A DNA stretch of 63,301 nucleotides, filler included, from Reticulomyxa filosa (taxonomy: Eukaryota > Protista > Foraminifera), in NCBI GenBank assembly GCA_000512085.1. It is 23 parts of 23 records of this genome, joined end to end, with 100 filler letters (N's around TTAATTAATTAA, not from the genome) between each part and the next. Parts side by side here need not be neighbours in the genome. Positions count along the whole stretch, not along the records: positions 46,248 to 48,334 come from ASPP01034040.1; 22 more parts are not named here. One strand, given 5' to 3'. The notes under the pieces are model-generated. The model was not told the origin of the DNA, ran no database searches, and saw nothing but the letters and a program-made list of their open reading frames with translations. The stretch's first letter is position 1, and the number at the start of each line of letters is the position of its first letter. Of the stretch, positions 46,073 through 48,334 are shown in pieces. Position numbers and translations under genes: made by a program.

Positions 46073-46261
46073 CTATTGTAAGAAAATGGTGATGTGTCAT
46101 TCGAGAATTGAAATTTAAAATGTGAATAGATAGACATATATGTATATNNNNNNNNNNNNNNNNNNNNNNNNNNNNNNNNNNNNNNNNNNNNTTAATTAAT
46201 TAANNNNNNNNNNNNNNNNNNNNNNNNNNNNNNNNNNNNNNNNNNNNAAAAAAAAAAAAAT

Positions 46262-48334
46262 TTGGAAAAAAAAAAAATAGGAGCAAAAGAAGAAGATTTA
46301 CCATTTGAACAATTGCATTCTGATGGAAACGTATATTGGTGCATTTGGGATATGGATGAGCAAGTGTCTCAAATGGAAGCAATATCTTTTTATATTAAAA
46401 TGACGGAAACAAAAGCAGACAACACTCAGGTCACATCAATAATTGACAAGAGAACGCGCACATTCCGATCGCAAGTGACAGTTATACATATCCCCGAAAA
46501 GAAAAAGCTTTCAAATTTGACTATTACTCAACAATATGAAATATATTTTTGGGCTATCTTTGAACATTTGAATTGGAGTATGAATGAAACCATTCCAGTG
46601 TCAGTGGCTCTAAATGCGATATCCGAATTTCTTCGCCATTGCAGTGATCCGAAGGAGGAACATTCCAAGATGATTCAATACGGGTCAATGATAACCACAT
46701 TATTATCATTGACAAGAGATAGTCTTAACAAAATTACACAAGATAAGGAACTGGAATGGGGACAAGTTTATCACTTTATTATTATTATTATCATTATTAT
46801 CATTATTATTAAAAAAAACAACGAAATATCCACCATTTGATATATGTATATATTTGTGATAATGTGTGTTTCCCCCCCACAATAGATGATTCGTGGCGTC
46901 TTTAGTTTCTATTTGGTTTTATGTTATTGCAATGGAAACATCAAACTGGAACAAATAATTCGTTTTTGTTTTTTTTTTGAAAAAAATAAAAAGGAGCATT
47001 AAAATGTTCGTAATCTTTTGATGCAACATTTGCAAGCGTGTGACTTGAACAATGAATTTGCACTTTCACGAAATGGTGCATTGCAAACGACTGGAACAAG
47101 AAGAAAAACCTGATGTGCAAAAGTTTGTTCAATTGTCGGAAACATTGAAAAACAAAGTGGAAAATAAAAATCTGTTGGATATACTGTTGGTTATTGCGGA
47201 GTGCAAAATGTGGACGTATTATCTGTCTCATTATATCAGTCGAACCATGACCGTTTCATATGCGTATGAAGACGAGGGAATTGAACACTCTTGGATGGAA
47301 GGCAAAGAAAAGTTCACGCAGACCTACTTGTCGGCACAAGAGTGTGGCAGTATTGGACGATTATACAGATGTGATCAAAATGGAATAACTGAAATGGAGC
47401 GGCAGATACGTCAAGGCTTGAAATATTACCTTATGGTCGAGTTATGGAGAAGAAAAGGCTCCACTGCTGCTTTGCATTTGAATGACAAAAAATTTAAGGG
47501 CTTATTTGGATTTGTGGTAGGAATTAGTGACAATCATCAACAGAGTAGCTCTATCAAAAATGTACCTCCCAATGATATCTTTCAATTATTGGAATATTGC
47601 AATAACCAAAGATTAAACAGTGCCTTCAAGGAAATGCGCTCTACTTTTTCAAAGGCTTTCATTTCCAATCAAATTGATTGGAAAAGCTTTGAACGAAAGC
47701 ACTTTATACATTTTATTGCTGGTTAACGCACACAAACTTAATTTTAAAAAAAAGATCGGAGTCTGATTATTATTTCATATTTGTTTGAATGAAACAAAAC
47801 AACAGGCATATTTACGGAATTGTATTTGAAAAACAATACAAACCATTCTGATACTATAATGCAATTTGCGAGAAGTATCAGTAAATACTCCAATAATCAT
47901 TTGCAAGGTACGCAGTCTGGACGATGTAATGATCGAATAAGCTTTTTGTTCTCACAGTTTTGTATTGCACACTTTCATTAAAATAAATTAGTCAAAATAT
48001 ACAAGTGAGGAAGGGGCAAACATATAATAGGCTGGCAATTGGTGTTTCAGAGTATTCTCCATTCAAAAATCAAAATGGCGAAGCAACATTGGAGCATGTG
48101 CAAATATATCGGTTGGCTTGGCATTTAGTTGGAGTGGTCTTATCTTTGCCACAGTCGCCTTTGAGTATTCTATTCCACAACCCAATGGCCTACGCTAGCC
48201 AATATCTGTTAGCAATGCCGGAAGATCAGAGTGCCTCGTTGCTTCGGGCGATGGCTGGATCTGGAGCCTGGCTATGTCCCAACAATCACTTGTACTTTGT
48301 AACCGATTGCACAGCAACAAACGAAAGCGCAAAG
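46262..48334 (+). CDS. RNF213: RNF213-like E3 module fragment ending in an RZ (RNF213-ZNFX1) finger, multi-exon
   Basis: RLAWHLVGVVLSLPQSPLSILFHNPMAYASQYLLAMPEDQ...WLCPNNHLYFVTDC matches recalled RNF213 EMAIHAAAVLL...PLKNLAFSPATMAHAFLPTMPED...WYTCPNGHPCSVGEC. Upstream exons are helical. Truncated at both ends. Confidence 0.82.

What the first reader, a model, noticed from the sequence alone, without database searches (positions are those of the whole stretch)
48005..48334. Protist RNF213-type RZ finger with intact catalytic-Cys spacing: candidate antibacterial, non-protein ubiquitylation system outside animals
Seen: the exon encodes LAMPEDQ...WLCPNNHLYFVTDCTATNESAK, with Cys (48275), His at +4 (48287) and Cys at +11 (48308). 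Established: human RNF213 has PTMPED...C4505-x3-H4509-x6-C4516, and this RZ finger mediates RING-independent ubiquitylation of bacterial LPS, with C4516 proposed as the nucleophile. The upstream helix context is RNF213-like rather than ZNFX1-like. Inference: a bacterivorous protist carries a potentially active RNF213-like ligase, pointing to ancient cell-autonomous immunity or prey/symbiont tagging. Testable prediction: the next codon after the contig end (Cys+9) should start a CxxC, followed by IGG and a His. AT-rich introns show the gene is host-encoded, not bacterial.
Basis: partly seen in the sequence, partly recalled or inferred. Interest (0 to 1): 0.85.

Follow-up and report, generated by a model that had tools for sequence, protein, structure and literature searches.

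The report
Broken foraminiferan RNF213-like ligase copy
This is a damaged copy from a large family of foraminiferan genes related to the human antibacterial ubiquitin ligase RNF213; the family is real and probably active, databases already label its zinc finger, and nobody has tested what it does.

Summary
The motif is real. Cys48275, His48287 and Cys48308 match Pfam ZnF_RZ above its cut-off. The piece is the whole Reticulomyxa filosa contig ASPP01034040.1.

The family is RNF213-like, not ZNFX1-like. Relatives match RNF213 in the AAA core (E 1e-101), the pre-RZ helix plus finger (E 4e-13) and the C-terminal domain (E 1e-29). About 13 RZ loci occur in this assembly, with more in Bolivina, Nonionella and an amoebozoan. 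A sister contig identical over the last 252 nt continues with CxxC as predicted, but with IGN and a His four residues later than IGG-xx-H.

An N-terminal exon is fused, at a 6-nt microhomology, straight to the E3 region, so about 13 kb including the AAA core is missing. There is also a CAA-to-TAA stop (47000) and a 35-nt frameshift deletion (after 47062). It is most likely a recent pseudogene; an assembly chimera is not excluded.

RZ fingers outside animals are known, and UniRef already names R. filosa paralogues 'RZ-type'. No evidence here bears on LPS or any antibacterial activity. The leftover interest is the expanded family, which includes paralogues lacking the catalytic Cys.

The parts
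46254..46765 (+). Exon from the far 5' (N-terminal) region of an RNF213-like gene; no Pfam domain; exact 5' boundary not fixed
   Evidence: 93% DNA identity to L010 371-1063, whose AAA Walker A lies at L010 ~8081; region collinear with the 5' end of a 4843-aa RNF213-like ORF in L004
46766..46885 (+). GT-AG intron, phase 0
   Evidence: splice sites conserved in L008 and L010
46886..46954 (+). Next N-terminal exon, cut off in the middle by the rearrangement
   Evidence: L008 and L010 continue the exon to a donor further on; the window diverges after 46954
46949..46954 (+). Junction of the large internal deletion (about 13 kb missing, including the whole AAA core); 6-nt microhomology GAACAA shared by the L010 exon and the L006 intron
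46955..46993 (+). 3' remnant of the intron that precedes the E3-region exon in intact paralogues
   Evidence: aligns to introns of L005, L006 and L007
47000..47002 (+). Premature stop TAA where L005, L006 and L007 have CAA (Gln)
47062..47063 (+). Site of a 35-nt frameshifting deletion, flanked in L006 by a TTTGCA repeat spaced 35 nt apart
46994..47721 (+). E3-region exon upstream of the RZ finger (carries the two small lesions near its start)
   Evidence: 74-78% aa identity to paralogues, 25% to the AAA-bearing P0015 at aa 2762-2942; own profile finds no RNF213 match
47722..47805 (+). GT-AG intron
47806..47956 (+). Short E3-region exon
   Evidence: 64-73% aa identity to paralogues over its first 33 codons; 3' boundary inferred from homologues that read straight across it
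47957..48030 (+).
   Evidence: conserved ends, non-triplet indels among paralogues
48031..48334 (+). Last exon on the contig: pre-RZ helices, MPED motif and N-terminal two thirds of the RZ finger
   Evidence: pairwise dN/dS 0.04-0.29 among paralogues
48242..48331 (+). ZnF_RZ-type (PF20173) match, profile positions 2-32 of 54, cut by the contig end
48275..48277 (+). First zinc-ligand Cys (mouse C4451, human C4505)
48287..48289 (+). Zinc-ligand His (mouse H4455, human H4509)
48308..48310 (+). Cys at the catalytic nucleophile position (mouse C4462, human C4516)
48083..48334 (+). 252 nt identical to sister contig L006 (ASPP01019988.1), which supplies the missing CxxC, IGN and His; upstream the two are only ~85% alike

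Best explanation
The piece is a recently broken (pseudogenised) copy from an expanded family of RNF213-like giant AAA+/E3 ubiquitin ligases in the foraminiferan Reticulomyxa filosa. Intact members most likely work as RNF213 does. ATP binding in the AAA core switches on the E3 module, an E2~ubiquitin docks on the C-terminal domain, the RZ-finger Cys takes ubiquitin as a thioester, and a nearby His deprotonates the acceptor so that ubiquitin passes to a target, plausibly the surface of an intruding microbe or a damaged vacuole, for autophagic removal. Shown here: domain order (N-terminal stalk, AAA core, E3 region, RZ, CTD), conserved zinc ligands, Cys and His, purifying selection, and transcripts in other foraminifera. 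Inferred from mammals: catalysis, ATP control, target and defence role. This copy cannot do that in the normal way: a microhomology-flanked deletion removed about 13 kb with the AAA core, and a nonsense codon and a 35-nt frameshift interrupt the frame ahead of the RZ exon.
For: Contig identity. Family matches to RNF213 structures: AAA E 3.5e-101 for P0015 and 1.5e-18 for R. filosa P0002, pre-RZ helix plus finger E 3.6e-13 with Cys and His in register, CTD E 1.2e-29. Walker A motifs in L004 and L010. Lesions absent from three to five paralogues. Exon-to-intron junction with 6-nt microhomology; second deletion at a repeat spaced 35 nt apart. Private pN/pS 0.38 on the window's E3 exon against 0.18-0.34 for sisters, i.e. 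selected for most of its history and broken late. The deposited gene calls on this contig stop before the finger. Mechanism in mammals: PMC12075652 and 10.1101/2021.05.10.443411.
Against: No reads or transcripts were available, so the lesions are not confirmed in the genome. The assembly is very fragmented (50,809 scaffolds, N50 3.6 kb), and the 252-nt exact tail shared with L006 shows that paralogues are entangled in it. In-frame splice routes around both small lesions exist on paper. pN/pS is well below 1. No activity or substrate data exist for any non-animal member.
Confidence: 0.68

Rival explanations
1. The contig is an assembly or library chimera stitched from pieces of several paralogues. 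Each underlying gene may be intact, and the RZ exon really belongs to the L006 gene.
For: Three segments with different best relatives: 93% to L010, 82-85% to L005/L006, then 100% to L006. Fragmented assembly. Low pN/pS. A 1-nt shift in an A-run in sister L005 looks like a sequencing error.
Against: Neither the 5' nor the middle segment is identical to any contig fetched, so they are not copies of those contigs. Assemblers do not join on 6-nt overlaps (inference). A C-to-T nonsense change and a second microhomology deletion within about 110 nt of the junction fit biological decay better than one mis-join.
Confidence: 0.17
2. The locus makes a short, AAA-less RNF213 derivative (E3 region, RZ, CTD), by cryptic splicing round the lesions or from the ATG at 47052, acting as an ATP-independent ligase or a decoy.
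For: In-frame donor/acceptor pairs exist, e.g. 46962 to 47100. The frame is open from 47052 through all later exons. The RZ residues are intact and pN/pS is 0.38.
Against: The ATG at 47052 comes into frame only through the deletion. The bypass sites are coding or non-splice positions in paralogues. Mammalian RNF213 needs ATP binding in the AAA core for E3 activity. No RNA evidence was listed.
Confidence: 0.08
3. The family is a real RZ ligase family but serves housekeeping or other roles (lipid droplets, membrane or organelle quality control, antiviral defence), not LPS tagging or antibacterial defence. This rival concerns the family's role and is compatible with the copy being broken.
For: No carbohydrate-binding CBM20 was detected in the N-terminal fragments seen. 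Mammalian RNF213 acts on very different targets. Nothing in the sequence specifies LPS.
Against: Strong paralogue expansion and repeated loss of the catalytic Cys are typical of defence gene families (inference). The human CBM20 was found only by cryo-EM, so a Pfam blank says little.
Confidence: 0.3
4. The finger belongs to a ZNFX1-type helicase or an unrelated protein.
For: PF20173 covers both RNF213 and ZNFX1; the E3-region exon alone gives no RNF213 match.
Against: Paralogues carry the RNF213 AAA core upstream and the RNF213 CTD downstream, which ZNFX1 lacks. No helicase or NFX1 domain was found in any long homologue.
Confidence: 0.01

Closest known systems
Mammalian RNF213 (mysterin; PDB 6TAX, 7OIK, 8S24, 9G08)
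   Same: Family-level order of stalk, AAA core, E3 region, RZ finger and CTD; Walker A motifs GETGCGKT and GKPGSSK; CHCC zinc ligands; catalytic Cys spacing; MPED motif and preceding helices; length near 5,000 aa.
   Different: No RING detected in any long non-animal homologue (Pfam and regex). IGN plus a 4-residue insert before the His in most foraminiferan members. Many paralogues instead of one gene, some without the catalytic Cys. No CBM20 detected. The window copy lacks the AAA core and is frame-broken.
ZNFX1 (RZ-finger SF1 RNA helicase E3)
   Same: RZ finger with the catalytic Cys/His pair; RZ known from unicellular eukaryotes.
   Different: No helicase, NFX1 fingers or Z-RING/Miz domain here; an RNF213 AAA core and CTD instead.
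R. filosa 'RZ-type domain-containing proteins' (UniRef100_X6LXS4 = RFI_31005, X6NBK0, RFI_06457, RFI_38115) and X6PD77 'ring finger protein'
   Same: Direct paralogues, the closest 82-94% identical over the last exon; already named for the RZ domain in public databases.
   Different: The window's own RZ exon is not in the deposited gene calls; no functional or evolutionary description was found in the literature searched.

Membership tests
RZ finger (PF20173) | Profile match above the curated cut-off | tested here: met
   30.5 bits against 27, E 2.7e-7 on the truncated finger; 29 of 30 homologous segments match
RZ finger (PF20173) | First Cys and His zinc ligands and catalytic Cys at +11 | tested here: met
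RZ finger (PF20173) | Second zinc-ligand pair CxxC at catalytic Cys+9 | tested here: inconclusive
   beyond the contig end; present in L006, which is identical over the last 252 nt, and in all 27 homologues scored over the whole finger
RZ finger (PF20173) | General-base His after the IGG turn | tested here: inconclusive
   beyond the contig end; sister has IGN and His at +13, aligned to human H4537 across a 4-residue gap; geometry not measured
RNF213 family (gene family as a whole) | Dynein-like AAA+ core upstream of the E3 module | tested here: met
   P0015 E 3.5e-101, P0002 E 1.5e-18, P0021 E 4e-21, P0031 E 5e-92 against RNF213 chains
RNF213 family (this copy) | Dynein-like AAA+ core upstream of the E3 module | tested here: not met
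   N-terminal exon joined directly to the E3-region intron; about 13 kb missing
RNF213 family (this copy) | Continuous reading frame to the RZ finger | tested here: not met
   TAA at 47000 and 35-nt deletion after 47062; cryptic bypass only formally possible
RNF213 family (gene family as a whole) | E2-docking C-terminal domain after the RZ finger | tested here: met
   profile of downstream regions matches the RNF213 C-terminus, E 1.2e-29; off the contig for this copy
RNF213 family (gene family as a whole) | RING domain in the E3 module (present in animal RNF213, dispensable for RZ activity) | tested here: not met
   no RING by Pfam or regex in long homologues spanning the E3 region; gene models may omit exons
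RNF213 family | N-terminal CBM20 carbohydrate-binding domain | tested here: inconclusive
   no Pfam hit in P0049 or the L004 N-terminal ORFs, one of which has FN3; N-termini incomplete
RNF213 family | ATP-dependent transthiolation and lipid A ubiquitylation | not testable with these tools
   needs biochemistry
ZNFX1 family | SF1 helicase and NFX1 zinc fingers upstream of the RZ finger | tested here: not met
   absent from all long homologues

The most novel reading that the evidence does not exclude
Foraminifera carry a large, fast-turning-over repertoire of RING-less RNF213-like ligases, with catalytic members and members that keep the zinc finger but have lost the catalytic Cys. The repertoire works as a diversified cell-autonomous immune system that ubiquitylates non-protein surfaces of prey, parasites or endobionts. 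With the amoebozoan homologue, this would place RNF213-type defence near the base of eukaryotes and make the RING a later addition. The broken copy here would be a by-product of that birth-and-death process.
Probability: 0.3. Interest if true: 0.7.

Novelty: new member of a known kind. Interest (0 to 1): 0.36.

Why it matters
RNF213 papers in the searchable library treat it as a mammalian or animal immune factor; none holds both RNF213 and Reticulomyxa. Full-architecture homologues in Rhizaria and Amoebozoa suggest a deep origin, unless transfer explains them. They also offer natural variants (no RING detected, shifted His, Cys-less paralogues) for testing what the RZ mechanism needs and how targets are chosen. 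The copy in this window is the wrong one to study, because it is broken; intact paralogues should be used.

Tried and rejected
Single-exon phmmer against the PDB found nothing, and a length-limited homologue search with the last exon found nothing; both were superseded. No sequencing run was listed, so read laying could not be used. AlphaFold of the closest paralogue's RZ region (mean pLDDT 71, about 85-94 over the finger) gave no significant Foldseek or VIA match, so this is uninformative. A profile of the E3-region exon found no RNF213 match. The Atlas gave only PF20173 leads below 0.9 for the last exon and nothing for the first. No relative was found in viral, prokaryotic or JGI metagenome contigs by pattern scan (low sensitivity); a prokaryotic origin is rejected on introns and provenance. 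The R. filosa genome paper and Otten et al. 2021 are not held. The idea that the first exon is an unrelated gene was set aside because its relatives lie collinearly at the 5' end of AAA-bearing loci, although one continuous transcript is not shown.

Full report
Provenance and observation. The 2,087-nt piece is identical to the whole Reticulomyxa filosa contig ASPP01034040.1 of GCA_000512085.1. The last exon matches Pfam PF20173 ZnF_RZ-type at E 2.7e-7, above the gathering score, over profile positions 2-32 of 54. In mouse RNF213 the zinc ligands are C4451, H4455, C4471 and C4474, the nucleophile is C4462 (human C4516) and H4483 is the proposed general base (10.1101/2021.05.10.443411; PMC12075652). 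The spacing here is the same, and the contig stops one codon before the third ligand. The exon most probably starts at 48031, not 48005: the AG at 48029-48030 and the donor at 47957 are conserved, the DNA between them has non-triplet indels among paralogues, and homologues read straight across that junction.

What family it belongs to. An exhaustive phmmer search with the last exon gave 36 relatives. The best are R. filosa paralogues; others come from transcriptomes of the foraminifera Bolivina argentea and Nonionella stella, from the amoebozoan Clydonella, and from metagenomes. With and sister contig L006, about 12 further RZ-bearing loci are seen in this assembly; some may be alleles. Long members match solved RNF213 chains in the AAA core: P0015 E 3.5e-101, Clydonella P0031 E 5e-92, Nonionella P0021 E 4e-21, R. 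filosa P0002 E 1.5e-18. A profile of the finger region aligns to human RNF213 from the preceding helix through the His (E 3.6e-13). A profile of the downstream region matches the RNF213 C-terminal domain (E 1.2e-29), which ZNFX1 lacks. No helicase, NFX1 or RING domain appears in any long homologue. One metagenomic contig holds a called 4,843-aa product with AAA and RZ hits, and R. filosa contig L002 carries stalk, AAA, E3 region and RZ in order, split over four gene calls. The family is therefore RNF213-like in overall architecture.

L006 is identical to the last 252 nt of the window and continues with C-P-T-C, then G-Y-A-I-G-N, and a His at second-Cys+13. CxxC is thus confirmed by proxy. IGG is replaced by IGN, and most foraminiferan members have a four-residue insert before the His, which HMMER still aligns with human H4537. 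Among 27 distinct homologues that span the finger, 22 keep the catalytic Cys and 21 of those keep a His at +9 or +13. Five have lost the Cys but keep the zinc ligands, and three of those five have also lost the His. Two of the three are sisters in the tree, so this is about two independent co-losses: suggestive of a Cys/His pair, not proof. Selection on the RZ exon is strongly purifying (pairwise dN/dS 0.04-0.29).

Positions 46254-46954 are 93% identical to the far 5' end of locus L010, whose AAA Walker A lies about 7 kb further on; positions 46950-48334 are 82-85% identical to the E3/RZ part of L005 and L006. The two halves meet inside an exon on the left and inside an intron on the right, sharing only GAACAA. 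Distances in L010 and L002 put the missing DNA at about 13 kb, including the whole AAA core. That the left exon belongs to the same kind of gene is inferred from collinearity with L010 and L004 and from the intron-like gap after the first L010 gene call. Just downstream, TAA at 47000 replaces the CAA of L005, L006 and L007, and 35 nt present in all five paralogues examined are missing after 47062; in L006 that stretch is bounded by a TTTGCA repeat spaced 35 nt apart. Substitutions private to the window's E3 exon are 10 synonymous and 16 non-synonymous (pN/pS 0.38, sisters 0.18-0.34), so the copy was under selection for most of its history and broke recently. The deposited annotation splits the contig into a 162-aa and a 309-aa call that ends before the finger. 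In-frame cryptic splice routes round the two small lesions exist, but the product would still lack the AAA core, whose ATP binding activates mammalian RNF213. No reads were listed, and the assembly is fragmented (N50 3.6 kb, PMC13746701), so a chimera remains possible. The 252-nt exact tail is either gene conversion or a collapsed repeat.

Mechanism. For intact family members the best model is RNF213-type transthiolation: ATP-gated AAA core, E2~Ub docked on the CTD, ubiquitin transfer to the RZ Cys, His-assisted transfer to an amine or hydroxyl acceptor. Domain order, residues, selection and transcripts in other foraminifera are shown; activity, ATP control, target and a defence role are inferred from mammals. 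Nothing here points to LPS. No CBM20 was detected in the N-terminal fragments, but the human one was found only by cryo-EM (PMC11549300). That R. filosa eats bacteria among other food is from my own knowledge, not tested here.

Novelty. RZ fingers outside animals are known: the ZNFX1 RZ is traced to choanoflagellates (10.1101/2025.10.14.682297), and UniRef already names R. filosa paralogues RZ-type domain-containing proteins. I found no paper that describes RNF213-type AAA-RZ-CTD proteins in Rhizaria or Amoebozoa, but the library lacks most subscription journals, including Otten et al. 2021. From my own knowledge, domain databases list non-animal RNF213-family proteins. Verdict: new member of a known kind, and a defective one; interest 0.36. 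The expansion in foraminifera, with RING-less and Cys-less paralogues, is the part worth pursuing.

Steps left out. No step needed referral.

Noticed in passing
Homologues P0006, P0007 (R. filosa), P0011, P0017 (Bolivina), P0015 (metagenome): RZ fingers that keep the CHCC zinc ligands but lack the catalytic Cys; three also lack the His. Candidate pseudo-ligases, lost several times in the tree.
   Followed up: partly
L004:1-20533 (ENA ERZ23488602, scaffold of 49.8 kb): Two divergently oriented RNF213-like genes (ORFs of 4,843 and 3,510 aa) with long unbroken frames; an FN3-domain ORF lies just upstream of one and may be its N-terminus; FHA and BRCT genes nearby suggest a eukaryote. Source organism not identified.
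   Followed up: partly
L002:1-12861 (ASPP01047817.1): A near-complete R. filosa RNF213-like gene split into four gene calls (2155, 506, 1534 and 736 aa); a good candidate for an intact paralogue, though the contig ends soon after the RZ finger.
   Followed up: partly
L005:~1915-1935: One-base frameshift in an A-run in the short E3 exon of the closest annotated paralogue; sequencing error or another decaying copy.
   Followed up: no
L007 3' end and L001 5' end: These two contigs translate identically across the short E3 exon and probably overlap as parts of one gene (RFI_26849 plus RFI_31005).
   Followed up: no
L012 (ASPP01001449.1): A divergent R. filosa RNF213-like gene (AAA call followed by RZ call ETO35632) on a long branch apart from the expanded clade, with His at +9 as in animals and a longer CxxxxC loop.
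   Followed up: partly
P0031 (Clydonella sp. ATCC 50884 transcriptome): Amoebozoan RNF213-like protein with AAA match E 5e-92 and a canonical IGG-xx-H RZ finger; no RING detected.
   Followed up: partly
L006:4057-4511: An intact RZ finger that is not covered by the deposited gene call (RFI_22838 ends before it).
   Followed up: yes
window:46776-46812: ATT/ATC triplet microsatellite in the first intron, longer than in L010.
   Followed up: no
P0022 (ENA, contigs of 214 and 889 kb): A 676-aa hit with eight short matched stretches at 29% identity; possibly a repeat protein unrelated to the family.
   Followed up: no
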